Source of the DNA: Paramicrosporidium saccamoebae KSL3
Lineage: Eukaryota; Fungi; Cryptomycota
Assembly (NCBI GenBank): GCA_002794465.1
Contig: MTSL01000219.1
Span: forward strand, 11,459-43,458
Direction of reading: 5' to 3'
Length of the DNA: 32,000 nt
In this document: positions 1,462-25,471 of the stretch, piece by piece
Layout of the letters: each line of letters opens with the position of its first letter
Position numbering within the stretch: position 1 is the first letter of the stretch
Notes under the pieces: generated by a model
Databases searched by the model: none
Told to the model about the DNA's origin: nothing
Seen by the model: the letters and a program-made list of their open reading frames with translations, nothing else
Position numbers and translations under genes: made by a program

Positions 1462-2806
1462 TTATAAGAATTGTTTAAGGATTCGGGCTACTATAGGACT
1501 CAGCATTGACTGATCTTTGCGAAGTGTCTTCATCAAAACCGCCATCGAACCCGCCAGCAGCAAAATCTCGCCATGGGGAATGTTCCTTGCCCATCCCTTC
1601 TCCACCAAACCCCGATAAAAGGCCACACCCGCTCTCGGCAACATCTATAGAAATTAGAGAGAATGCAGACACCATACATATAGGGCAAGTTCGGCACGAC
1701 GGGGCTTCTTTTCAATGAATATGCTGCCCGCCGAGATAAAGCCCATCCACCAAAATGCCATTTTCCATTCACCAGTGATCACACCCGCCTCCATCAGGTT
1801 CCGCTGCGCACACAGCATGGCCTGGAATATAAAGACGTAGGTGGACATGAATGCGGACGATTGTGCACCGTTACGGACAGCATTTAGCAGGGTCTCGTTT
1901 ATTCGGGCAAGTGATTTTGTGAATTTGAAGAGCAGGGGAGGGATGAGGTGAAGCGAAAAGTACATGGGAAAGACCATCTTAAAATTAGCATAAAGAACCC
2001 AGAGGATTCGATCCCAGCATGAACGCCCAGGATGGATAAGTGAGCAGGTCAGCGTGTCACAGCTTCCCATGAGGGGAGGAATCTCAACGCCCCGAGCAGC
2101 ATGTTTGCTCACCAGTCCCCCAAAAATGCTCATATCCATATAGCCGGACCGGATCTTCCTCTGGAAGAGCTCAATGACGGCCGGATCCATCTGTGTGACT
2201 TGTGTCAGAAAGTGACTGTACGTAGGATCAACCGTCTCTGGTCGAACCACAAAATTGTAAACCGCCTGTCCAGAACAAAGTGCAAATACTGCCGCATCTC
2301 CGAAATATGCTATTGGATCCAGACGAGGATGTTTGCGCTGGAAATTGCTCCACGCACTTGCCATGGCACGCACCACCAAATATTGTGCCAAAATCCACCG
2401 AGTGCTCTCTTTCTCCACTACAATTGCCAATGATCCAACCAGTCCCCCAACAAAGGCATTCCAGCTGTCCTTCCCACGGCGACGCTCCAATGTCCGCTCC
2501 ACGGCCTTGAAGAGGGCAAAATAGAGAGCGACAAAGGATCCGAAGCGAATCGCCGTCCCACCAAAAGAGATCCGCAGTGCTCCCAAAATGTTCAATCTAC
2601 CAGTTAATCCTCCATCGATGGTACTGTTTGGAACGGAGCAGCTTGATGAGGTGCGGCAGGAAGCCTACTCCGCCCCGAACGGCCCAGGCGAGACAAAAGT
2701 CACGCAGCAGCGTTCGCAGAAAAATAAACAGGATCTTCCGCTTTTCCTCTCCCAAACAACGTGCCTGATCCACCAGCTGATGGAGACGTGACTCCACATT
2801 GCCCAT
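1462..2806 (-). CDS. TMEM135: TMEM135-family (peroxisomal membrane-type) protein, 427 aa
   Basis: Exons 2806-2625, 2596-1678, 1644-1462 (introns 28 and 33 nt). Motifs DSWNAFVGGLVG, CSLIHPGRSC, PMYFSLHLIP, IEKKPRRAELALY|MLPRA. Confidence 0.85.
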
Positions 2807-5904: not shown

Positions 5905-7424
5905 ATGGCGGCTGATGAGGAGACACCCTTTGAAGTGTTACTCCAATTCAGCAAATTTTTAGAGGCGCCTGCAAATGTAAAGACGGCAAAGAGCTCGTTG
6001 GTCTTGTGCATACAAAACCCTGAACTGGCGGAAGACATTATCGAACGGTCTGTAGACTCGGTCCAACAGGACCCGAAGAATAGACGGCCGATCCTTCAGT
6101 TTATGGCAACTCTATATGAACACCCGGAGGCAAAAAGCTTTCGACCGATCATTGAGAGGAGGTACCGGGACCTTGTTGATATCGGGCTACGGGGCACATC
6201 CCCCTCGGTGGTTAGGAATGCCGCCAAGGGGCTAAAGACTTTACTGCAGGCCTTTGACGACACATTCCAAGGCGAATGTGGTGATTTGAACGCTTCCATA
6301 AATGAGGCCATTGGACTGTACATTGTGGTTGCGTTTCTAATTGTGTCTAGGACTGAAGCCGAACAAAAATTTAATCAGAACAAGCAATCCGTGCTAGAAG
6401 CCATTGAGCGGGAACGTGAAAATGTATATAACCCACTCGGCTTCTCATATTGTCTAGCATAAAGCGCTGAGAGTAAGCTGCTGGAGTCGCCCTGAAGACG
6501 AGACGCCGGAGGAGGAATTTTTGTCGTTTTACAAAAAATCAGCTGGTCTCTCTGATTCAGATTTCCGACAGGCCAAGAATAATTTAGCATTATTCTGTCA
6601 GGTCAATGGACTGGAAAAGACTGAGCATCCTGTCGTTGTGGTGAATCTTGATGAAGTGATGCCTTTTATCCCCGAGCTTCGAGACAGTCGAGATTCAAAG
6701 GTCCGCCATACTGCTGAAGACTTTTACTCGGTTGTCAAGGAGATTGCTCATTTTTGCTTCTTCTATTCGGATTTGCGCGATTTTGAACAGCCACACACTG
6801 AGTACTATTGCGAGGATGATGACGGACGGAAGCTGAATGACTACGACTTTCAAAGCGATGAGCTTGCATTGTTTATCAAAGACTCTTCTATCCCCTACAC
6901 GCACAAGTTTTACCGCGAAAGGGCATATAGGAATCGTCTAGCAGCATATCGATACGACCACAACAGGGAAATTGTGAATATCATCCCGAGAGAGTTGGAG
7001 CGTGATTGCAACCGATGTAGGCAGGATTGTGATCATCTTTTCGGAAAAGTATTTTCCAAGATGAAGCACTCTTTGACGACATTAAGATCACTGGGAGTTG
7101 AAATGTGCTTCCTAACCAAAGTTCACCTTAGTCTAGCCTTGGCAATCAATGTTGCGCTCGACATCAACACTGTCGTGCCATCCCAGTCGCTGTACTCTAC
7201 CAGCAAATATGATGTAGACTGGGGATTCTCAGCTATTAGACAAAAGTACGGCGATGGGCGTAAATACATTATTGCTGGCCGATCTAAAGCAAGCAGTCGA
7301 TGCGCTGAAAAGGTGGGAAAGGCATCATTGGATCTTAATAATTTAGTTTGGTTGGAAGTATTTGGAGGTGCGACACCCAGAAGACTTTGGCAAGCTAGTC
7401 CAGGAGTTGAGGACGGCTGAATAG
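5905..7424 (+). CDS. CTK3: CTK3-like CTD kinase subunit fused to an Eyes-absent (EYA)-type HAD domain with degenerate catalytic motifs, 472 aa
   Basis: Exons 5905-6317, 6351-6423, 6458-7312, 7347-7424 (introns 33, 34, 34 nt). N-terminal TPFEVLLQF...LAEDI and IERERENHKALRVSCW...EEEF match CTK3 N and C domains. From about 6630, VVVNLDEV...FFYSDLRDFEQPH...DDDGRKLNDYDFQSD...LYSTSK...RKYIIAG...EVRHPEDFGKL aligns by eye along the EYA domain. Confidence 0.8.
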
Positions 7425-7473: not shown

Positions 7474-8951
7474 CTACGAATCTGTCTCCACGGTTTTTGC
7501 ATCTAACGGAGTGCCCGTAGTCTCTCCCAAATTGTAAGCCACGTACACGAAGCCTGCTGCGGTGATAACGGCCAGTGTTGCGTAGAGATACAAAGGATGC
7601 GCAGCGTGAATTATGGGCCAAAATGCTGTGACGGCGAGAATCTTAAAGGTGCCAGCTACGCCCATTGAGAGGGCCAAACCCTTTCCCCTGATGGCAGAAG
7701 GGAGTATTTCTGCAGAGACGACCATGGGGAGCGGCCCAATGCCAACGCTGAAGAACATTCGGTTTAGAAAGATGCCAAAAAGCGAGAGATGGGTGCATAT
7801 ATGATGGGGATGGACCTGCATCACAGCGGCCAGGATTAAGAGACTGGCAGATATTCCGGCGAGGCTGATGAGAATTGGCCCTTTCCGGCCGATACTGTCG
7901 AGATTATGCACGACGAGCCAGATTACGATTATTTGAGGCAGCATGGATAGAACTCTATAGAATATTAGTAGCTGTAATATATTGCTTACGTCATGCCGAT
8001 TGACATTTCCCGAACAAATCCCAAGTCGTGGAGAATGATGGAAGAGTAATATGTAATAATGTTGTTCCCCGATAGCTGCTGTAGGAGGTGAAGAATCAAG
8101 GTGACCAGGACCGCGTGTCGGTTTTCCTTCTTGACCAGATCACTGAACGAACTTTGCTTTTGCGTTTGTTGACCAGCATAGTCCTTGAGGATTTGAATTT
8201 CCTTTTGCAGTTGCTCATCTTCTCCTGGTCCGTAGGTTGTCTCCAATACTTTCAGGGCCTCCTCCTCTCTCCCGTGGAGCACCAACCATCTAGGCGACTC
8301 TGGAAGAGAAATCAGCGTAGTCACAATCGCGGGAATATGCAGTACTGCGCCGATCAAAAATACTATTCGCCAACTGATCGTCTTGTCGAGGTAAATGACA
8401 ATGGGCAGCGCACAAAGGTTTGCCAAAATGCCGCCGATCCATCCGGCCAGTTCGCCGTACCCTTGGAGGGAGCCACGAATTTTGCTTGGTGAAATCTCTG
8501 CTAAAAACAAACCAGCTCCCACCGAATTCAATCCTATGGACAGCCCAGTGAACAGTCGGCCAATGATGATGGCCCAAGTACCTGGGGCAAAGGCCGACAA
8601 GACGGCTGCCAGCAGTCCGATCACAGCACTGATTACTAATATGGGCCGTCTGCCCAGCCGGTCGCCTATCACTCCACTTGCCAAATTTCCAAGCAACATA
8701 CCTAGGAGAATCACCGAAACAATCAAGGTGGTCTCCAACACGGAGAGCTCATAGGAAAACGGAATATACAAAATCACAGCCGAGAGAAGACCAATCATAT
8801 ATCCACTGTAGAACGTTGTAATTGAGACTATTATGGTGTATTTGTAACATGCCCATGGGTATCCCGGCGGATCCACACCGGGTGGGTTGTCCGTCATACC
8901 GAAACTGGACTGGCGTGATGCAGATATAGAGGGCCTATGCTGATTGGACAC
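7474..8951 (-). CDS. MFS sugar-porter family transporter (inositol/hexose type), 480 aa
   Basis: Exons 8951-7990, 7954-7474 (35-nt intron). Motifs GDRLGRR, AEISPSKIRG, PESPRWL, QQLSGNNIITYY, DSIGRK, AEILPSAIRGKG, ETTG. Confidence 0.92.
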
Positions 8952-9340: not shown

Positions 9341-10849
9341 TTAGCGGAGATTAGAAGGGGGACTGCATGGTCTCGGAAGTCTACTATCATCGGTTGTCTT
9401 GTTTCCTTCTGTAAACTGCAATTCAGGCACCTTTGGGGATCTTCTTTGTTCAATTTCCTCCAAGGAGGCTCCCTTGGTCTCTTCCACCACCACAGCAATA
9501 AATAAAAACCCCAAAAACGCAAGCAACGCAAATGTCCAGTAAACATGGGACGGATGTGTCCATGTCACTAGCAGCGGGAAGCTAGCAGTCACGACATAAT
9601 TACACGTCCAATTAATGGCGAGTGATAGCGAGAGTGCTCTCCCGCGAATGGGAAATGGCAGCGTTTCGGCAACCAGGACACCTGGGACGGGTCCCATCCC
9701 AGCCGCAAAGAAAGCCCGATGTATGACAATTCCGACGAGGAGCATCCAAAATCGCTGATTAACCTCTTTGATAACGGTCGCGCCGCCAATGATCACAAGA
9801 CTGATTGCAATTCCAGCTTCGGAAATAAGTAAAGCCGGTCGGCGTCCATTCTTGTCCAGTGTGAACACGACTGAAATAAGCACAAGCAGCTGTGGGATAC
9901 AAGCAAGGGCATTATAAAAGAGTGCATCGCGCGATGAGTGCCCCATGGAATGGAGCAGGATGGTGCAATAATATACGATCACACTATTACCAGAGGCCTG
10001 CTGAAAGACCTGCATCAGAATGGCAATCAAGAGTGGCCTGTGATATTTTGAATCCACAATTTCGGCTTCGGAGAGACAGGTAGGTTCCTGATAATCGCGG
10101 CGGTCGCAGAGCACTTGATATTGTTGAATTATATGCGTCTCGTGAGAATCACCATAGATTTGAGTTAGCACCAAACGCGCTTCTTCATTCTGACCATTGC
10201 TCACTAGCCATTGTGGCGTCTCTGGCAGGACAGCAATCACTAATATCTACATGTTAGAACTAAACTTGTAAAGTACCCAGTGAAAGATACACAGTATTGC
10301 ACCTGATGCGAACATTGAGCGCCAACACAAGTCTCCTGCGGTGCAAGCAACCACTTCATAGCCAACAAAATACGAGACGGCTATCCCAGTCCAGCCACAG
10401 AGCTGATTAATTGCGCCCAGTTTTCCTCTAACATGCGATGGCGCCACTTCGGTAATGTAAAGCGCTGGGATCACTGACGCAACTCCCACCCCCAAACCAA
10501 GCACAAATCTACTGAGCATCATAAGCTGACTCCCATTCCCCAGGGCAGCAACCACCGCTGCCACCAACATCAGCATGTTGTTCCAGGCCAACGTCCTTCT
10601 GCGGCCCACCGCGTCGGCAATTCGTCCACTAAAGATAGAGCCCAAGATGGCGCCGATGAGAATGATGGAGACTATGGTGCTAATCTCGGCAGTGGTGAGC
10701 GAGATTGTGCGTGGGATGAAGAGGATTGCTGGGGCGATAATACCCGTGTTATATCCGTAAACAAAGGAGGAGAATGAGGCCACCAGAGTGTAGCCATATA
10801 CACTGGCAGGCAAACGTGGTTTAGGTAGATCTGGGTCTAGTTGACTCAT
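9341..10849 (-). CDS. MFS sugar-porter family transporter, tandem paralog, 492 aa
   Basis: Exons 10849-10277, 10246-9341 (30-nt intron). Motifs ADAVGRR, TEVAPSHVRGKLG, PETPQWL, QQASGNSVIVYY, DKNGRR, AETLPFPIRGRA, EETKG. Confidence 0.92.
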
Positions 10850-10977: not shown

Positions 10978-12561
10978 TTAAAGATTCTTTGGTTTATTCA
11001 TACTGGAAATGTCAACAGACAGTGCCTTTTCTTTCATTCCATCCAACCCATGGCTTTTTGCATCTGGGTCAGCTTTGATTTGGCGATAATCGTTGTAAAG
11101 GTTACGGCTTCGAGTGTATCGTATCAGGTTCATTCCCAACACAATTTTGGCGATGAACAGTCTAAAAAATTGAGAGAACTGAAGCTTATACCCGACTATG
11201 ACCAATGATCCTGAAAGAAGATAGTCTCCAATCCAAACCTCTGAAGCCTTGATGGTTTGCAGAGCAATCCTCACTAATAGGCAAGAGAATGGGAATGAGG
11301 AGAATCCAATTCTCCTTGACACTGCAGGAGACTGATCTGCAAGTGTTCCCTATGGTAATAAGAGGACATTCATAAACATACCTCATCAGTGCTAGATTCA
11401 AAGTCTTTGCACAGCGTATCCATATACTTTGAGTAAACATCGGGATGGATATGATTGAATTTTGTAATAAAGGAATGCTTGAGCCAGTCAACAAGGATCT
11501 CTGAGAAAAACACGAGTCCCAGCGGGGTGACAAGACCATAGAGCACGTAATCCAAATCAAGTGTGGCACTGATCTCTGTCATATTTCGGAACCCAATGAT
11601 TAGCAAATACAAAGATAATTGGAAACGCTCCAAAATATCGGCGCAGGAGAGTTGGAATAAATTTTCCTTTTCAAACTTTTTGAAAACGGCCGACTTGATC
11701 TCCACAAACTGATTAGAAACCAACAAAGTAAGCAGTGCATTGCTGAAAGAGTTGATCGATACATTGAGAGTGATGGCTTGTAGAAAGAGTACCATTGTGT
11801 GAATGACTAAAATTACGAAAGAATGGAAATGGCTACAGACATACAAGATGGTCAAAATAAAATGCGCAACGGGATGCAGGCGTATGATTCGACCAGTTTC
11901 GGCTAAAGTGCCTCTTGCCGATTTAGAAAAGAAGGAGTCGAGAATATCTAGCCCAAAAGAACAGCACAGCTTGTCCATGACCTACAGGAATAGTCTCATA
12001 AGTGATGAAATCAAACCTCAAAAACGTTGAATATTACATAGAGCTTTATCACCGACTGCCCACGGATCGAGTGGTAAACACGGGAAGCGTCAATCTGCTG
12101 CAGGAGCACGCAAACGGTAAAAAGTAACAGCCCTCGCAGTAAATCAAAGCCAAAATATGGCAACTTTTGCGCAGGCTCTCTCTTGAAGCTATTCACTTAA
12201 GAATTCACTAGAGTGTGTACATGCGTCGATACAACTGGACGTGAGCGAGGGACAGTAGGGAGATTAGGATCCTCACTGGAAGAATCGTAAAGTTGTACAA
12301 GAAACTGTCCAAGCAGATAAAGTAGCCGAGAAAGAGCAACTAAGAAGAACATTAGCCATATCGTCACTGCACTTGTTCGAGCTTCTGAGGCACGTGAAGG
12401 AAGTTGTACACTCTTTCGTGCTTTGTCACTTGGATCTCATCCTGCATTGGAGTGCTAATTTGGGCAGCAAGGTAGTCCCATAATCGAAGCTTAGTGGCCA
12501 CACTGCGAGAGACTAAGGGAATTCTGGACATTGTGTTTCCATGGGGGCCAAGTGTCTTCAT
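10978..12561 (-). CDS. TAPT1: TAPT1/Emp65 (DUF747) ER membrane protein, about 473 aa
   Basis: Exons 12561-12373, 12339-12221, 12188-12017, 11981-11382, 11349-11192, 11161-10978. Motifs CLDSFLYNFTILP, YHSIRGQSVIKLYVIFNVFEVMDKLCCSFG, SNQFVEIKSAVFKKFEKENLFQ, SEILVDWLKHSFITKFN. Confidence 0.93.
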
Positions 12562-13148: not shown

Positions 13149-14126
13149 ATGTCTGGAGAGGGCGTTACTTCGGCCGGCATGGAGCCCTCCAAGAACCGAC
13201 GCCACCGCAAAGATAAGCCGTGGGATACAGATGATATTGACCATTGGAAAATCGACCCGTTTACCAAAGAAGAGATGAAGGGTCCGCTGACTGAGGAGAG
13301 CTCGTTTGCGACCCTCTTCCCAAAGTATCGTGAGGGGTATCTTAGAGAAACTTGGCCGCACGTTACCAAGCTCCTAGCCGGACACGGTGTAGCTTGTGAG
13401 CTAAACTTGGTGGATGGCAGCATGACCGTCAAGACCACCCGCAAAACCTTTGATCCGTACATTATTCTGAAATGTCGCGACCTCATCAAGCTTCTTGCCC
13501 GCAGTGTCCCTCTTCCTAATGCCGCCAAGGTGCTGGATGATGGTGTGACTTGTGATGTTATCAAGATTGGTAATCTTGTCCACAACAGGGAGCGGTTTGT
13601 AAAAAGACGCCAACGTCTGGTAGGCCCCAACGGTAACACTCTAAAGGCCATCGAGTTGCTTACACAGTGCTTCGTTCTCGTACAGGGAAACACGGTATCT
13701 GCTATTGGGTCCCACAAAGGGCTAAAGGAGCTGCGTAGAATCGTAACAGACTGCATGAAGAACATCCATCCCATCTATCACATCAAGGAACTCATGATCA
13801 AGCGCGAGCTTATGAAGGATGAAAAGTTAAAGTTCGAGTCGTGGGATAGATTCTTGCCCCAGTTCCGAAAACTCAACCAGAAGGCTAAGCCTGCAGCCAA
13901 GCCGTCTAAAGAGAAGAAGCCATATACTCCCTTCCCTCCGACGCCTACACCCCGACAGGAAGATCTCCAGATGCAGTCGGGAGAATATTTCCTCAAGCCA
14001 GAACAAAAGGAAGCCAAGAAGCTGGCAGAAAAGAAGGCAAAGCAAAAGGTCAGGAAGGCAGAGAAGGAAGTGGAACGAGCAAAGTCCTACATTCCCCCCG
14101 AAGAAGCTATCCGCAAAAGACCGTAG
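13149..14126 (+). CDS. KRR1: KRR1 small-subunit processome KH protein, 325 aa
   Basis: Intronless ORF with [60 protein letters not shown]. Confidence 0.97.
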
Positions 14127-16095: not shown

Positions 16096-19000
16096 ATGCC
16101 GTCTATACCCATCGTTGCGACCCAGCATGACCATGGGAATGGTCTGATGAAGATTGTAGAACTTTGTGTAGGTGGGTTCATGCTATAGGTTTGTAAAATC
16201 GCAGGCTATCAAGAACAGTGTGCCACTTTTTCTGCACTTGTAGACGGCAAAATATTCGGCGAGGCTCTGCACAAAATGTAAGCATATACCAAGTGTCTAG
16301 TTATCTTTAAGTGACTGTGAATTTTTCAAAAATGTGCTCACTCCTCAAACTAGCACTAATGGGGTGTTACGCGCCGCACAGCTAAAGAGAATGTATTTGC
16401 GAATCATTGCGTTTGGGAGAGAGGCTCTTGATCGAGATTGGAGCGAGTTGCCGGTTCCCGATTTCAATGCTCTTACGAGACCTTCGGCGACAGCCAAAGT
16501 GAGATCGGATGTATTGGAGCTGTTCTCGGCTGTGATTGTTAACGTTGCTCTAAATATTCCGCATTTGAAGGTGGAGATTGATTGTCTCCTTGCCTCTCTA
16601 CCCCAAATGGACTCTGAAATTGTAAATTTTTCGCTAGCCTCGATGAAGGCTCTCGTTGTTGGGACTTTTCCGGAATCACCAACTCTGACAAACATTACTA
16701 TTTCTCCTCAGCTGGACTATGAGTATGAGTATAAGGCTCTCCGAGTACTGTTTGAAGCCATCTCATCCGAGGCTGAGGTTCTCCGCGAGCAGCTAGTATG
16801 CATTAGTGCTTCTTTCCCATTTTTAGATACAGGTTTCACATGACCGTGAACAGCTAAACGCAAAGTTTCCAGCCCTTCAGTCCATGGTCGATATTTTACA
16901 AAAGGAAAACCAAGAGTTGCTGGTTGCACGCGATGAATACGCTCATGAGTTGTATGTATTATATGGATTCATCATCAATGTTGTAGAGAAGCCATGGTTC
17001 TTGCCAAGGCAAACGTGATGGCAGAGAGCGCAAAAGGATCAGACAGCACATTGAAGCTCATTGAACAGATGCGCTTGGTGGACCCCAATGTCACATGCCT
17101 CAGTGACGTAGGAATGGTGTTGGAAAAAATGTGGAATGACAGCCGCAAAAAAGACGAATTAATCTTGCGTCTTCAGGCTCGATGTGAGGAAACAGAGATT
17201 AGTCGCGATGTTCTAATTGAAAAGGAAAAGATTCTACTGGAAGATAAGCGCGAGTCCGAATTAGAAATGCAAAGCTTAAAGGACGAACAAAATTCAATTT
17301 TCTGTCTTCAATCTGAAAAGGTAATAATGCAAGCCGAACTTCAAAAGCTGTCCGATGAGAATGGTCAGCTTCGAATTAGAATTTCTCAAAAAGAAGACGA
17401 GGTTATGCAATTGGAGAATGGGCGTCAAGAATATGCTTTGAATATCCAAAGTCTGTCCGACACCCATCAATCCAATGTCGAGTCGCTTCAAAAACAACTG
17501 GATGATAACATAATGGAGCGCACCAATGCATCCGAATCGTTGGCAAAGCTGCAAACCCAATATAATCTCCTCTCCAATACCTATGCGGAATCAACTTGTC
17601 AATTATACGAAGATGTCGCAGGAATTTCGAACACTGTTAGGATTCACGAATTTCGCTTACGGAAAGTAAAATCACAATTATCCAAATCAAAAAGCCGAGT
17701 TGTAATTTTGCAAAAGGAAAACCTTGCGCTCAATACCCATCGATCAAAGCTGCGGAAGAGATTAAGAAAGCTATGGCCCAACTATCATGGTTTAAAGAAG
17801 ACTGTGAATCAAAGAGAGGCGGCGGTGCAGGAGCTTAAAGCAAAAGTGGCATCTTCGACTCAATTGAATGAAGAAATGGAAGCCTTGCTGCAAGCCAACA
17901 CTGAAGAAATCTTAATGCTCCAGTCTCATTTTAAGGAAACACTGAAGCAGTTGGATGAGAAAAAGAGGGAGCTTGACAATCTTGCAAGTCTGAATCAAAG
18001 TGTGAGTGAATCCCATAAAGAACTGGAAGTGCTGCGGTCCAATCTTTCCCAGGCCAAAGAGGAGGCAGCAGAGAATCTGGTGCGCGGTCAGTTGCTATTG
18101 GAAGAAAATCTCTGCCGTGCAGATAACCTTGCAAAGGCAAAAGAGACAGAATTCCATTCTACTGTGGCAGAGCTCAAGCAGCAGCTAGATCAAGCCACTT
18201 CCAATGCGGAAAAGTTGAGAATTGAAAATGAAGAACTAACGAGGGAGAGCTTTGAATTAAAGAGCCTGAGTAGGAAGCGGGATGGACAAATTGCTGAGCT
18301 TGAGGATGAGCTTCAGATTAAAATGCTGGGAAAGGAGAAACTAACTCGCGCGATGGAGATGGAAATTACCCGTATCGATGAGCTGAACAGGATTGAGGTT
18401 AATCGTCTGACAGAAAAGATACGGGAACTACAAGATAATGCCGGCAGTGTCGAGGGAGTGCACGCTAGTGCGATGAGCCAGCTCAAAAGCGATATTTTGG
18501 CATTGGAGCAAGAAAACCGTACCCTACTTGCTGCGATGGCTCAATTAAGTTCCGAACGAGAACAATTTGCACACAACTTGCATGAAGCGGAACGGACTAG
18601 GGCCAAGTCTATTCAAGACGGGGAGAAACTGGAGAGTGCTTTGGTGGAAATAATGGCGGGGAAAGGAAATTTAGAAAATGAAATGCAAAAGATGCTGAAT
18701 GAATACACTGTGCAAAGAGAATTATCCCAGCGACTAGGCGAACAGTTCCAAAAGCAGTCTGAAGAGCTGGAATCTTGTCGTCTGGACTTGGATGAAGCCC
18801 AGCGAGAGATTGCCTTGCAAAAGCACGATCTGGACAATCTCGCCGCACAGGAAGCCCAGCGGCTTTCAAAGAAGCAGATGGAGATATCGGAGCTGCAGCA
18901 ATCACTCCTGAACCAAGAGACGCACTGGTCCGAACAAATAAATCAACGGAATGCCCGAATCAGCAATCTCGAAGCCGAATCGTCAGATTTAAAGACAAAA

Positions 19001-19342
19001 ATATACAGCCGAGAGAGAAACTGGGAGTCGGAGCGGGCAGAATTGCAGAACTGGCTACGACAGCAGGAGAAAGAGTTGCAAAAGCTTGTGGCATATCATG
19101 CACCGCATGAAGATGCCTCGTGTCAAACAGACTTTTCCGGCAGCACGATGGCGGTTGTGACTGTGGACCTTGATCAGGTGGACCGAAGTGTCGTTGATCT
19201 CAAGGACAAGGAAATTGCCAAAATGAAAATGGCAATGAAAGAAATGCTCAATTCTATTCGCGAAGAACATCGGGCCATCTTGACCGTCTGGCATAATCTC
19301 GGAAGTCGAATGTATCGAGATACTTTTTATCAACGTGTCTAA
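16096..19342 (+). CDS. HOOK-family microtubule/dynein adaptor-like coiled-coil protein, about 1037 aa
   Basis: Exons 16096-16155, 16189-16277, 16312-16795, 16827-16951, 16987-19342. N-terminal FSALVDGKIFGEALHKIDCEFF...VLRAAQLKR (HOOK CH-like domain), long heptad coiled coil, C-terminal EEHRAILTVWHNLGSRMY. Confidence 0.72.
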
Positions 19343-22211: not shown

Positions 22212-23090
22212 TTACATGGCTGATCGATCGATAAGAGAATCGTAATGTTCCCCCAAAGAGTATGCATATTTCTGAAAACTACATGCAATGAAAAAACGAC
22301 TGAAAAGATACCAGATACGAAGCGGACTGTCATTTCTATCAGAACCAAACGTCATTGGAGGAGAACTGGCTTGATAAACAACAATTGGCAGTGAAAGGGC
22401 CTCTGATAATGCATCAAGCTCCAAGTGTCCTCCCCAAAGATCATTCCCCCTTAATCTTTCACAATAATCTTCGAGAGGCTCTTCGAGAAAGCCGGCATAC
22501 TTTATCTCATTACCGAGAATATACTCTGCCGCCATATCCCGAAGTTTGCTTTGGTCATAATTTCTACTGTAACGAACCTTGAGTTGATGCGAAAGTGCGT
22601 TGAATAGACAGCTGCCATCGGGATCTATGTGAAAGATTTCAAGCTGCTCAGTTAGCAAGACTGTCTCAAATGCCTCTCTCTCTAGTCGACCTAGCTGGGG
22701 CATTTGTGCTGCGATCGCTTGTGCCTCTTGCTTCCTCTTGGCATCCTCTTCCGACCGCATCTCCTTCTTGGCCTGCCGTTTGGCCCGGGCCGCGGCGGCT
22801 CGCTCGTTTTCATGTGTACGTTCCATGACCAGAGCAGCACCAGCAGCAAGTCTTTCGTCAGTCTCCAAGGCCTCTTTCTTGCTTTCTAGCAGAGCCTCAA
22901 GAGTGCTAACCTCCTCATGGATGCTTTTTTTCTGCTTCTTATCAGCGTTTTTTACAGCTCGGCGTGCCGCGACCAGCCTTGTACGCAGCTCCTTGAGCTC
23001 TTGCCTCCGCGCAGAGAAGGGGTCTTCTATATCAACAAGCTCCTGCTCGCTGGTTTCATCGTATGCTTCGACATCCACAGAGTCTTCCAT
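22212..23090 (-). CDS. OTU2: OTU deubiquitinase (Otu2/OTUD6B-like), 281 aa
   Basis: Exons 23090-22312, 22278-22212 (33-nt intron). Catalytic IDPDGSCLF, WGGHLEL and LGEHYDSL, with a charged coiled-coil N-terminus. Confidence 0.9.
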   Translation of the reverse strand: MEDSVDVEAYDETSEQELVDIEDPFSARRQELKELRTRLVAARRAVKNADKKQKKSIHEEVSTLEALLESKKEALETDERLAAGAALVMERTHENERAAAARAKRQAKKEMRSEEDAKRKQEAQAIAAQMPQLGRLEREAFETVLLTEQLEIFHIDPDGSCLFNALSHQLKVRYSRNYDQSKLRDMAAEYILGNEIKYAGFLEEPLEDYCERLRGNDLWGGHLELDALSEALSLPIVVYQASSPPMTFGSDRNDSPLRIWYLFSRFFIACSFQKYAYSLGEHYDSLIDRSAM

Positions 23091-23275
23091 GGCCACGAAG
23101 CCAACAGGGGACCTATTGTAGGGCTGACTGAGAAAGATCCCTCAATAGGGATTTTCGATCCGCTGACCTGAAATTTTTGTAGTAGAGACTCTTTATCTCT
23201 AGTCCGTAGCCATGTTAATAGGATATCATATACTATATAAGTATCGTTTTAGGGAATTTATTATTTTGACTCTAT

Positions 23276-25385: not shown

Positions 25386-25471
25386 CTCGGGATAGCTCAG
25401 CTGGTAGAGCGGAGGACTGTAGTGTGTTCGCAGCCATCCTTAGGTCGCTGGTTCAATTCCGGCTCCCGAGA
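25386..25471 (+). tRNA. tRNA-Tyr(GUA) with 13-nt intron (25423-25435)
   Basis: Acceptor stem CTCGGGA/TCCCGAG+A, D arm AGCTCAGCTGGTAGAGC, anticodon stem GAGGA/TCCTT with GTA at 25419-25421, T loop GGTTCAATTCC, Pol III terminator TTTTT at 25473-25477. Confidence 0.97.

What the first reader, a model, noticed from the sequence alone, without database searches (positions are those of the whole stretch)
6632..7312. The EYA domain is a predicted pseudophosphatase (natural D-to-N at the nucleophile)
Motif I reads VNLDEV instead of WDLDET (AAT at 6644-6646 replaces the nucleophilic Asp), and the metal-binding GDGxEE reads GRSKAS. The motif II Thr (FLT) and motif III Lys (STSK) are kept. D-to-N at this site is the standard phosphatase-dead EYA mutation. 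Loss of two catalytic motifs in an otherwise intact, spliced domain suggests selection for a non-catalytic binding or scaffold role, possibly phospho-substrate reading (inference).
Basis: partly seen in the sequence, partly recalled or inferred. Interest (0 to 1): 0.7.

Follow-up and report, generated by a model that had tools for sequence, protein, structure and literature searches.

The report
Dead EYA phosphatase domain on Ctk3
In this amoeba-parasitic fungus, a subunit of the kinase that phosphorylates the RNA polymerase II tail (Ctk3) ends in an Eyes-absent (EYA) phosphatase domain that has lost its catalytic residues but is still strongly conserved, which suggests EYA and polymerase-tail phosphorylation are connected.

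Summary
The window comes from Paramicrosporidium saccamoebae. A 483-aa gene (exons 5905-6423, 6458-7312, 7347-7424, with two 34-nt introns) ends in a true EYA-fold domain. Its model matches human EYA2 with TM 0.79-0.87, and a family profile matches EYA3 at E=1.5e-35.

- **Motif I:** it reads V-N236-L-D-E-V, where EYA has WDLDET.
- **Motif IV:** it reads GRSKAS, where EYA has GDGxEE.
- **Retained residues:** the motif II Thr393 and motif III Lys423 are kept.
- **Selection:** a metagenomic ortholog (87% identical) has Ser at the nucleophile position. dN/dS for the domain is 0.10 (bootstrap 0.06-0.16), so the domain is selected but does not need the Asp.

1. The N-terminal half is a Ctk3 homolog (gamma subunit of CTD kinase I; the Pfam CTK3_C match passes its cutoff, and BLASTP against a bona fide Ctk3 gives E=1e-11 end to end). 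The gene is therefore a Ctk3-EYA fusion.
2. The fusion defines a family of about 30 mostly metagenomic clusters whose catalytic motifs are degenerate in different ways. The Rozella allomycis member keeps all four motifs, so the dead state is most simply read as derived.

In the fusion family, conservation sits in the EYA cap and the Ctk3 C-terminal helices, not in the catalytic core. I read the domain as a non-catalytic binding or scaffold module of CTDK-I. Activity was not measured.

The parts
5905..6423 (+). Exon 1 (aa 1-173). It encodes the Ctk3-like N-terminal helical (CID-like) domain and the start of the long CTK3_C helix.
   Evidence: The ATG-to-GT model is. BLASTP of aa 1-230 against the plain fungal Ctk3 P0052 gives E=1e-11 over aa 9-222. 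The Pfam CTK3 (PF12243) match is only 15 bits, below the cutoff. The AF2 model has pLDDT 90 and is all-helical.
6424..6457 (+). Intron 1, 34 nt, GT..AG.
   Evidence: The spliced product ERERENHKALRVSCW fits the family consensus E.DRE.HK.LRE.CW. The ortholog L001 has a 34-nt intron at the same place.
6458..7312 (+). Exon 2 (aa 174-458). It encodes the rest of CTK3_C and most of the EYA-like domain.
6382..6601 (+). CTK3_C-like region (aa 160-221, interrupted by intron 1).
   Evidence: Pfam PF12350 matches at E=3.1e-6 with 27.8 bits, above the 25-bit cutoff. An HMM built only from the fusion lineage hits the plain Ctk3 proteins P0052 (2.6e-12) and P0060 (5e-8). A fusion-only profile has yeast Ctk3 7JV7_C residues 225-292 as its top PDB hit.
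6623..7421 (+). EYA-like (HAD fold plus EYA cap) domain, aa 229-483, interrupted by intron 2.
   Evidence: Foldseek gives TM 0.79-0.87 to the EYA2 ED. Profile E-values are 1.5e-35 for EYA3 and 3e-32 for EYA2. TIGR01658 scores 48 bits, well below its equivalog cutoff of 195. pLDDT is above 90.
6644..6646 (+). Asn236 (AAT) at the position of the HAD/EYA nucleophilic Asp.
   Evidence: The ortholog has AGT (Ser) at this codon.
6650..6652 (+). Asp238, the retained second Asp (general acid/base position) of motif I.
6695..7090 (+). EYA-type helical cap (aa 253-384), the most conserved part of the domain.
   Evidence: 21 of the 35 positions that are at least 80% conserved in the fusion family lie here. 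The lowest sliding-window dN/dS values, 0.03-0.05, fall at aa 281-400.
7115..7117 (+). Thr393, retained motif II residue.
7205..7207 (+). Lys423, retained motif III residue.
   Evidence: The Lys is invariant in the close clade.
7277..7294 (+). GRSKAS in place of motif IV GDGxEE. There is no acidic metal ligand, and Arg448 occupies the Asp position.
7313..7346 (+). Intron 2, 34 nt, GT..AG.
   Evidence: The ortholog's intron here is 31 nt. Splicing gives FGWKYLEVRHPEDFGKLVQELRTAE, which aligns to the EYA C-terminus and folds as strand 462-465 plus helix 471-482.
7347..7424 (+). Exon 3 (aa 459-483 plus the TAG stop).

Best explanation
**What it is.** The gene encodes the Paramicrosporidium homolog of Ctk3, the gamma subunit of the Ser2 CTD kinase CTDK-I. 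Its C-terminus carries an EYA-fold domain that can no longer act as an aspartyl phosphatase.
- There is no nucleophilic Asp (Asn236).
- There is no acidic Mg2+ ligand in motif IV (GRSKAS).

**What selection keeps.** The fold is maintained, above all the EYA-specific cap, which in active EYAs covers the substrate site. The Ctk3 C-terminal helices are also maintained; in yeast these clamp Ctk1 and Ctk2.

**Most likely role (inferred).** The domain is a non-catalytic binding or scaffold module carried on the kinase complex. It may still dock a (phospho)peptide through the cap, Thr393, Lys423 and Asp238.

**Direction of change.** The dead state is most simply read as derived, because the Rozella allomycis counterpart has the same layout with all four catalytic motifs intact.

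**Shown:** the sequence, the fold, the motif states, purifying selection, the fusion architecture and the family.

**Inferred:** loss of activity, membership of a CTDK-I complex, and the binding role.
For: **Gene model and motifs**

**EYA fold**
- Foldseek gives TM 0.79-0.87 to EYA2.
- Profile E-values are 1.5e-35 (EYA3) and 3e-32 (EYA2), covering motif I through the C-terminus.
- Strand 1 ends at Asn236.

**Motif table for 37 domains**
- Canonical EYAs have DxDxT / T or S / K / GDGxxEE.
- The window has N-L-D-E-V / T / K / GRSKAS.
- The ortholog has S-L-D-E-V / T / K / GRSKES.

**Selection**
- dN/dS is 0.099 for aa 226-483 (bootstrap 0.059-0.158) at dS about 0.7.
- The value is the same for the N-terminal half.

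**Ctk3 half**
- Pfam CTK3_C passes its gathering score.
- BLASTP against a plain Ctk3 gives E=1e-11 end to end.
- Fusion-only HMMs hit plain Ctk3 proteins and yeast Ctk3 7JV7_C.

**Family**
- An exhaustive phmmer search found 64 hits. About 30 of them span the CTK3_C and EYA-like regions together.
- One member (P0030) has the same two convergent sugar-transporter genes downstream as the window.

**Rozella allomycis**
- EPZ31782.1 (P0065) has IFDLDET / S / K / ADGDQE.
- It also has weak CTK3 and CTK3_C matches in the correct order.

**Where conservation sits**
- Conservation is concentrated in the cap and in CTK3_C, not in the catalytic core.

**Literature**
- EYA2 D274N is the standard phosphatase-dead mutant (PMC8504185).
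- The roles of the HAD motifs are described in PMC8069645.
- Ctk3 binds both Ctk1 and Ctk2 (PMC10746219; bioRxiv 10.1101/2024.10.14.618141).
Against: - No enzymatic or binding data exist.
- The N-terminal CID-like domain misses the Pfam CTK3 cutoff (15 bits against 23.7). Its fold search is not diagnostic: Ctk3 structures are not among the top 50 hits, and CID domains appear only at E of 0.09 or worse.
- I could not check whether P. saccamoebae encodes Ctk1 and Ctk2, a second plain Ctk3, or a second active EYA.
- Thr393, Lys423 and Asp238 are retained in the window's clade but not in the other degenerate clades. A shared phosphate-binding role across the family is therefore not supported.
- The NJ tree is rough. 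It has long branches and I did not read off support values, so the polarity 'intact to dead' rests mainly on parsimony and on Rozella.
Confidence: 0.7

Rival explanations
1. The domain is still a phosphatase or another phosphotransferase that uses substitute chemistry. Asp238 could act as nucleophile, as in HADs of the DxTxx type, or the pocket could work without metal, with Arg448 taking the place of Mg2+.
For: Asp238, Glu239, Thr393 and Lys423 are retained, and an Arg sits at the motif IV Asp position in the window, its ortholog and P0003. The pocket-forming cap is highly conserved.
Against: - Asp238 lies two residues past the end of strand 1.
- The residue two positions after Asp238 is Val.
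- Arg448 is replaced by Gln, Cys or Leu in close relatives.
- The Asp238 column holds Thr, Asn or Glu in some relatives.
- No HAD enzyme is known to me that works without the strand-1 Asp (own knowledge).
Confidence: 0.1
2. The EYA-like region is a decaying relic with no function, on its way to being lost from a reduced parasite genome.
For: The parasite lineage is known for gene loss (PMC5701793). The catalytic motifs differ from clade to clade.
Against: - dN/dS is 0.10 at dS about 0.7.
- The reading frame and both splice sites are intact in two species.
- The model is confident (pLDDT above 90).
- The domain is kept in about 30 divergent clusters, including compact genomes.
Confidence: 0.03
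3. The domain is inactive and folded, but the protein is not a CTDK-I subunit. On this reading the Ctk3-like half is a generic CID/helical module that has been reused, and the protein acts elsewhere, for example in another nuclear complex or in another phospho-CTD-binding role independent of Ctk1/Ctk2.
For: - The N-terminal domain is below the Pfam CTK3 cutoff.
- The fold search finds generic CIDs and helical repeats.
- P0035 combines a CID (PF04818) with an EYA domain and has no clear CTK3_C.
Against: - CTK3_C passes its cutoff. In yeast this is the part that contacts Ctk1 and Ctk2, according to the secondary account in PMC10746219.
- The alignment to a bona fide Ctk3 is collinear over its whole length.
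- Nine CTK3_C positions are at least 80% conserved in the family.
Confidence: 0.15

Closest known systems
Animal and plant EYA domain tyrosine phosphatases (human EYA2 ED, PDB 3GEB/4EGC; EYA3, 9N0Y)
   Same: The HAD core and the EYA-specific helical cap are the same (TM 0.79-0.87). The cap motifs FF.DL..QxH...DDxGxxL..Y.F..D and RxxAxRxR, the motif II Thr and the motif III Lys are conserved.
   Different: - The nucleophilic Asp is replaced by Asn.
- Motif IV GDGxEE is replaced by GRSKAS.
- Identity is only about 20%.
- The score is far below the TIGR01658 equivalog cutoff.
- The N-terminal partner is a Ctk3-like module, not a transactivation domain.
Rozella allomycis CSF55 EPZ31782.1 / O9G_000261 (P0065; named 'protein-tyrosine-phosphatase' in UniRef)
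   Same: It is also from Rozellomycota (my own knowledge of the taxonomy). It has the same order of parts: a helical N-terminus, a CTK3_C-like helix (MIEKDREQHKRARQQW) and then an EYA domain.
   Different: All four catalytic motifs are intact (IFDLDET, S, K, ADGDQE). Its CTK3_C region is shorter. It is only about 26% identical over the EYA part.
Fungal Ctk3 / Lsg1 / FlpB, gamma subunit of CTDK-I (PDB 7JV7 chain C, 5CE7)
   Same: aa 1-228 aligns collinearly with a plain Ctk3. The CTK3_C signature is present.
   Different: The plain Ctk3 proteins recovered here (P0052, 222 aa; P0060, 219 aa) end after the C-terminal helices. This protein continues into a 255-aa EYA-like domain. The N-terminal domain is very divergent.
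Engineered phosphatase-dead EYA (EYA2 D274N and equivalents)
   Same: It has the same substitution at the same position (PMC8504185).
   Different: Here the change is natural and is combined with loss of the motif IV acids. The position has drifted further in relatives (Ser, His, Tyr).
Ramazzottius varieornatus EYA homolog GAV07135.1 (P0053)
   Same: It is another natural Asp-to-Asn change at the nucleophile (WNLDET), together with GNG in motif IV.
   Different: It is an animal-type EYA with a long low-complexity N-terminus and otherwise canonical sequence. It has no Ctk3 module.
Other HAD-fold pseudophosphatases, such as the FCP1-like domain of Tim50 (recalled from my own knowledge, not tested here)
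   Same: A HAD fold is kept while the DxDx(T/V) chemistry is lost, and the domain is reused as a binding module.
   Different: It belongs to a different HAD subfamily with a different cap and a different cellular setting.

Membership tests
EYA domain (EYA-type HAD fold) | HAD Rossmannoid core together with the EYA-specific helical cap | tested here: met
   The AF2 model has pLDDT above 90 over aa 230-480. Foldseek gives TM 0.79-0.87 and rmsd 2.6-4.1 over about 263 columns to EYA2, while other HADs score 0.51 or less.
EYA domain (EYA-type HAD fold) | Sequence score at or above the curated model cutoff (TIGR01658 equivalog_domain, 195.3 bits) | tested here: not met
   The score is 48.1 bits at E=1.3e-12. 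It is homologous but not an equivalog.
Active EYA/HAD phosphatase | Motif I DxDx(T/V) with a nucleophilic Asp at the end of strand 1 | tested here: not met
   The motif is N236-L-D-E-V. The ortholog has S-L-D-E-V.
Active EYA/HAD phosphatase | Motif II Ser/Thr | tested here: met
   Thr393.
Active EYA/HAD phosphatase | Motif III Lys | tested here: met
   Lys423.
Active EYA/HAD phosphatase | Motif IV acidic Mg2+ ligands (GDGxxEE) | tested here: not met
   The motif is GRSKAS in the window and GRSKES in the ortholog.
Active EYA/HAD phosphatase | Mg2+-dependent phosphotyrosine hydrolysis | not testable with these tools
   This needs recombinant protein and pNPP or pTyr-peptide assays.
Ctk3 (CTDK-I gamma subunit) | C-terminal helical domain (Pfam PF12350 CTK3_C) | tested here: met
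   The score is 27.8 bits against a cutoff of 25, at E=3.1e-6. A fusion-only HMM hits plain Ctk3 proteins and 7JV7_C.
Ctk3 (CTDK-I gamma subunit) | N-terminal non-canonical CID-like domain (Pfam PF12243 CTK3) | tested here: inconclusive
   The Pfam score is 15.1 bits against a cutoff of 23.7. BLASTP against Ctk3 P0052 gives E=1e-11 and includes this region. The fold search finds CIDs only weakly (4NAC TM 0.56 at E=0.09) and finds no Ctk3 structure.
Ctk3 (CTDK-I gamma subunit) | Forms a trimer with the Ctk1 kinase and the Ctk2 cyclin | not testable with these tools
   No eukaryotic genome or complex-prediction tool was available. The presence of Ctk1/Ctk2 in this genome was not checked.
Pseudophosphatase (pseudoenzyme) | Conserved catalytic fold, missing essential catalytic residues, maintained by purifying selection | tested here: met
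   Fold, motifs, and dN/dS 0.10.

The most novel reading that the evidence does not exclude
The EYA phosphatase may not be an add-on peculiar to this parasite. On this reading, a Pol II CTD-linked tyrosine phosphatase was physically built into the Ser2 kinase CTDK-I through Ctk3 in early-diverging fungi, and it was linked to CID modules in at least one other eukaryote (P0035).
- Rozella would keep the active enzyme, for example as a Tyr1-P eraser coupled to Ser2 phosphorylation.
- The Paramicrosporidium lineage and its relatives would have turned it into a non-catalytic reader or scaffold for the phosphorylated CTD.
Probability: 0.15. Interest if true: 0.85.

Novelty: new variant of a known kind. 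Interest (0 to 1): 0.6.

Why it matters
EYA proteins are studied as the only HAD-type tyrosine phosphatases. A 2021 review found both motif I aspartates fully conserved in the animal, plant and fungal EYAs it compared (PMC8069645).

This locus adds three things:
- a natural EYA that is under selection and has no catalytic residues;
- a family of such proteins;
- a domain partner, Ctk3, that puts an EYA domain on the RNA polymerase II CTD Ser2 kinase.

No searchable paper contains both 'Ctk3' and 'eyes absent'.

The intact Rozella protein and the dead Paramicrosporidium protein form a ready-made pair for asking two questions: what the EYA fold does apart from catalysis, and whether fungal EYA acts on the CTD. 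The work also corrects the deposited gene model.

Tried and rejected
- **Word-indexed protein search.** The full-length search found only the window's own protein and one relative. Searching with the family alignment again returned only those two. Searching with a trimmed core alignment returned nothing. The family came only from the exhaustive phmmer search.
- **Organism names.** Cluster look-ups named only Rozella, a tardigrade and Aphanomyces. All other family members are unnamed metagenome or Logan assemblies. I cannot say whether the DFDCIE clade is microsporidian.
- **Pfam and the EYA domain.** None of the Pfam scans returned an EYA-specific family, so I used NCBIfam TIGR01658.
- **N-terminal half against PDB.** phmmer found nothing. 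A profile that included plain Ctk3 sequences hit 5CE7 and 7JV7, but that is partly circular, so I rely on the fusion-only profile and BLASTP.
- **Fold search of the N-terminal model.** It was not diagnostic.
- **First tree attempt.** A Biopython bootstrap tree timed out. The faster NJ tree is only a sketch.
- **Rejected: sequencing error at AAT.** An independent ortholog also lacks Asp at this codon.
- **Rejected: a generic HAD rather than an EYA.** The fold and profile results exclude it.
- **Rejected: a register shift that would put Asp238 at the nucleophile position.** The strand ends at residue 236, and the ungapped alignment of 14 relatives agrees.

Full report
**Source and gene model**

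The window's protein is 97% identical to PSACC_03661 of Paramicrosporidium saccamoebae. This is an intranuclear parasite of amoebae placed in Rozellomycota (PMC5701793).

Reading the + strand from the ATG at 5905 gives three exons: 5905-6423, 6458-7312 and 7347-7424. They are joined across two GT..AG introns of 34 nt each and encode 483 aa.

The deposited model differs in two ways. It uses other boundaries for intron 1, and it reads through intron 2 into a shifted frame. My model is preferred for four reasons:
- The junction sequence ERERENHKALRVSCW fits the family consensus.
- The spliced C-terminus FGWKYLEVRHPEDFGKLVQELRTAE aligns with the last strand and helix of EYA domains.
- That C-terminus is modelled with high confidence.
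- An orthologous gene on a metagenomic contig has introns at the same two places, of 34 and 31 nt.

**The observation**

- AAT at 6644-6646 is Asn236 within V-N-L-D-E-V.
- GRSKAS is aa 447-452 (7277-7294).
- The FLT threonine is Thr393.
- The STSK lysine is Lys423.

The region is an EYA domain and not merely a HAD fold.
- phmmer finds EYA3 and EYA2 at E of about 1e-8.
- A profile of the family finds EYA3 at 1.5e-35 and EYA2 at 3e-32, over the whole domain including motif I.
- The AlphaFold model (pLDDT above 90 here) superposes on EYA2 crystal structures with TM 0.79-0.87. The next-best HAD proteins reach about 0.5 at most.
- Strand 1 of the model is residues 232-236, so Asn236 sits where HAD enzymes carry their nucleophile.
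- The score against the curated EYA equivalog model is only 48 bits against a cutoff of 195. This is a divergent homolog.

**Selection**

A JGI metagenome contig (L001) carries the complete ortholog, 87% identical at the protein level.
- Nei-Gojobori dN/dS is 0.099 for the whole gene.
- It is 0.098 for the N-terminal half.
- It is 0.099 for aa 226-483 (bootstrap 0.059-0.158), at dS of about 0.7.
- The lowest values, 0.03-0.05, fall in aa 281-400.

At the nucleophile codon the ortholog has AGT (Ser), while the flanking L-D-E-V is identical. The domain is under strong constraint, but that position is not constrained to be Asp.

Evidence that the N-terminal half is Ctk3-like:
- Pfam matches aa 160-221 to CTK3_C, the C-terminal domain of the CTD kinase I gamma subunit, above the gathering score.
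- aa 9-222 align collinearly with a plain 222-aa fungal Ctk3 (P0052) at BLASTP E=1e-11. P0052 itself matches Pfam CTK3 at 1.7e-41 and CTK3_C at 4e-22.
- An HMM built only from the fusion lineage finds plain Ctk3 proteins.
- A fusion-only profile has yeast Ctk3 (7JV7 chain C, residues 225-292) as its best PDB hit.

The N-terminal CID-like domain is weaker evidence.
- It scores 15 bits against the Pfam CTK3 cutoff of 23.7.
- A confident all-helical model (pLDDT 90) gives only weak fold matches. These are CID domains such as p15RS, Pcf11 and Rtt103 among generic helical repeats, and no Ctk3 structure.

According to the literature, Ctk3 contacts both the Ctk1 kinase and the Ctk2 cyclin, opens the kinase T-loop, and has no human ortholog.

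**The family**

The exhaustive phmmer search of 1.84 billion representatives gave 64 hits.
- About 30 cover query residues 146-475, that is CTK3_C plus the EYA-like domain in one protein. Several match Pfam CTK3_C themselves.
- Canonical animal, oomycete and other EYAs appear only at E of about 1e-6 or weaker.

A motif table for 37 near-complete domains shows the following.
- **Canonical EYAs:** DxDxT / T or S / K / GDGxxEE.
- **The window's clade:** His (most often), Asn, Ser or Tyr at the nucleophile. The Lys is kept, and motif IV reads G-[RQCL]-[ST].
- **A second clade:** D-I-E-D, with Ala-Pro in place of the motif II Thr, mostly without the Lys, and with GGH in motif IV.
- **A third clade:** D-F-D-C-I-E, with no acidic motif IV.

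One member of the third clade (P0030) lies next to two convergent sugar-transporter genes, the same arrangement as in the window. The transporters are 31-32% identical, which supports orthology over a large distance.

Of the 35 positions that are at least 80% conserved across the fusion family, 21 lie in the cap, 9 in CTK3_C, 2 in the Rossmann core and none in strand 1 or the flap.

**The intact counterpart**

P0065 is Rozella allomycis EPZ31782.1 / O9G_000261.
- It has IFDLDET, a motif II Ser, the Lys and ADGDQE.
- Upstream it has MIEKDREQHKRARQQW, which matches CTK3_C weakly, and an N-terminus that matches Pfam CTK3 weakly. Both matches are in the correct order.
- A metagenomic protein, P0048, has CTK3_C followed by W-D-F-D-D.

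The fusion therefore also exists in a form that looks active. The simplest reading is that catalysis was lost later, in different ways in different clades. The NJ tree is compatible with this but is too rough to prove it.

**Mechanism**

*Established chemistry (PMC8069645).*
- The first motif I Asp forms the phospho-aspartyl intermediate.
- Together with the motif IV acids, it holds the Mg2+.
- The equivalent EYA2 D274N mutant is used as the phosphatase-dead control.

With both features absent here, Asp-based catalysis is very unlikely.

*What is kept.*
- The fold is kept.
- The cap is kept. In active EYAs it forms the substrate site together with the core.
- In this clade, the phosphate-contacting Thr and Lys and the second Asp are kept.

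*Most likely role.* I therefore consider a non-catalytic binding or scaffold role within a CTDK-I-like complex the most likely function, at about 0.7 confidence for the overall picture. Binding of a phosphorylated ligand is plausible but unproven, and it is not supported for the other clades.

*Precedent.* EYA function without phosphatase activity has been shown in Drosophila (PMC3595212, listed).

**Limits**

- No activity, binding or complex data exist.
- I could not search the parasite's genome for Ctk1 and Ctk2, a second Ctk3 or a second EYA.

**Verdict**

The more interesting finding is the Ctk3-EYA architecture with an intact (Rozella) and a dead (Paramicrosporidium) version. No paper in the searchable library contains both 'Ctk3' and 'eyes absent', or 'EYA', 'Rozella' and 'phosphatase' together.

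Noticed in passing
window 5905-7424 (+): The deposited model PSACC_03661 (488 aa) appears wrong at both introns. It removes part of the conserved ERENHKA segment at intron 1. It also reads through the 34-nt intron 2, which replaces the true EYA C-terminus with an out-of-frame tail (VGKASLDLNN...).
   Followed up: yes
window 7474-8951 (-) and 9341-10849 (-); L004 5491-7125 (-) and 8706-9386 (-): Two tandem sugar-transporter (MFS) genes lie convergent to the Ctk3-EYA gene. The same arrangement follows the distant family member P0030 on metagenomic contigs, and the transporters are 31-32% identical. This is conserved microsynteny.
   Followed up: partly
window 6424-6457 and 7313-7346; L001 603-636 and 1492-1522: The introns are tiny and almost uniform in length: 34 and 34 nt in the window, and 34 and 31 nt in the ortholog.
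   Followed up: partly
P0053 (Ramazzottius varieornatus GAV07135.1): A tardigrade EYA homolog of the animal type also has a natural Asn at the nucleophile (WNLDET), with GNG in motif IV. It may be a second, independent EYA pseudophosphatase.
   Followed up: no
P0035 (EukProt transcript c12707_g1_i2, organism not given): This 453-aa protein has an N-terminal CID domain (PF04818, E=6e-11) followed by an EYA domain with W-N-L-D-D-V and a degenerate motif IV. It is a CID-EYA combination outside the window's family.
   Followed up: partly
P0046 (591 aa, Logan assembly): This is an EYA domain with intact motifs. It has an SH3 domain upstream and a second SH3-like insert inside the cap region.
   Followed up: no
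window 25386-25471 (+): This is the only RNA gene found. It is a tRNA (Rfam 57.9 bits) of 86 nt whose anticodon loop reads CUGUAG. It looks like tRNA-Tyr(GUA) with a short intron, and it is followed by a T run.
   Followed up: partly
window 16994-19342 (+): A 782-aa open reading frame with no Pfam match lies in the most purine-rich part of the window (AT skew 0.23-0.27, GC skew up to 0.16).
   Followed up: no
window 1654-2595 (-), 11370-11978 (-), 13149-14126 (+), 22212-23096 (-): The neighbouring genes are ordinary eukaryotic housekeeping genes: a TMEM135/Tim17-like protein, a DUF747 membrane protein, the KRR1 small-subunit processome factor, and an OTU cysteine protease.
   Followed up: no
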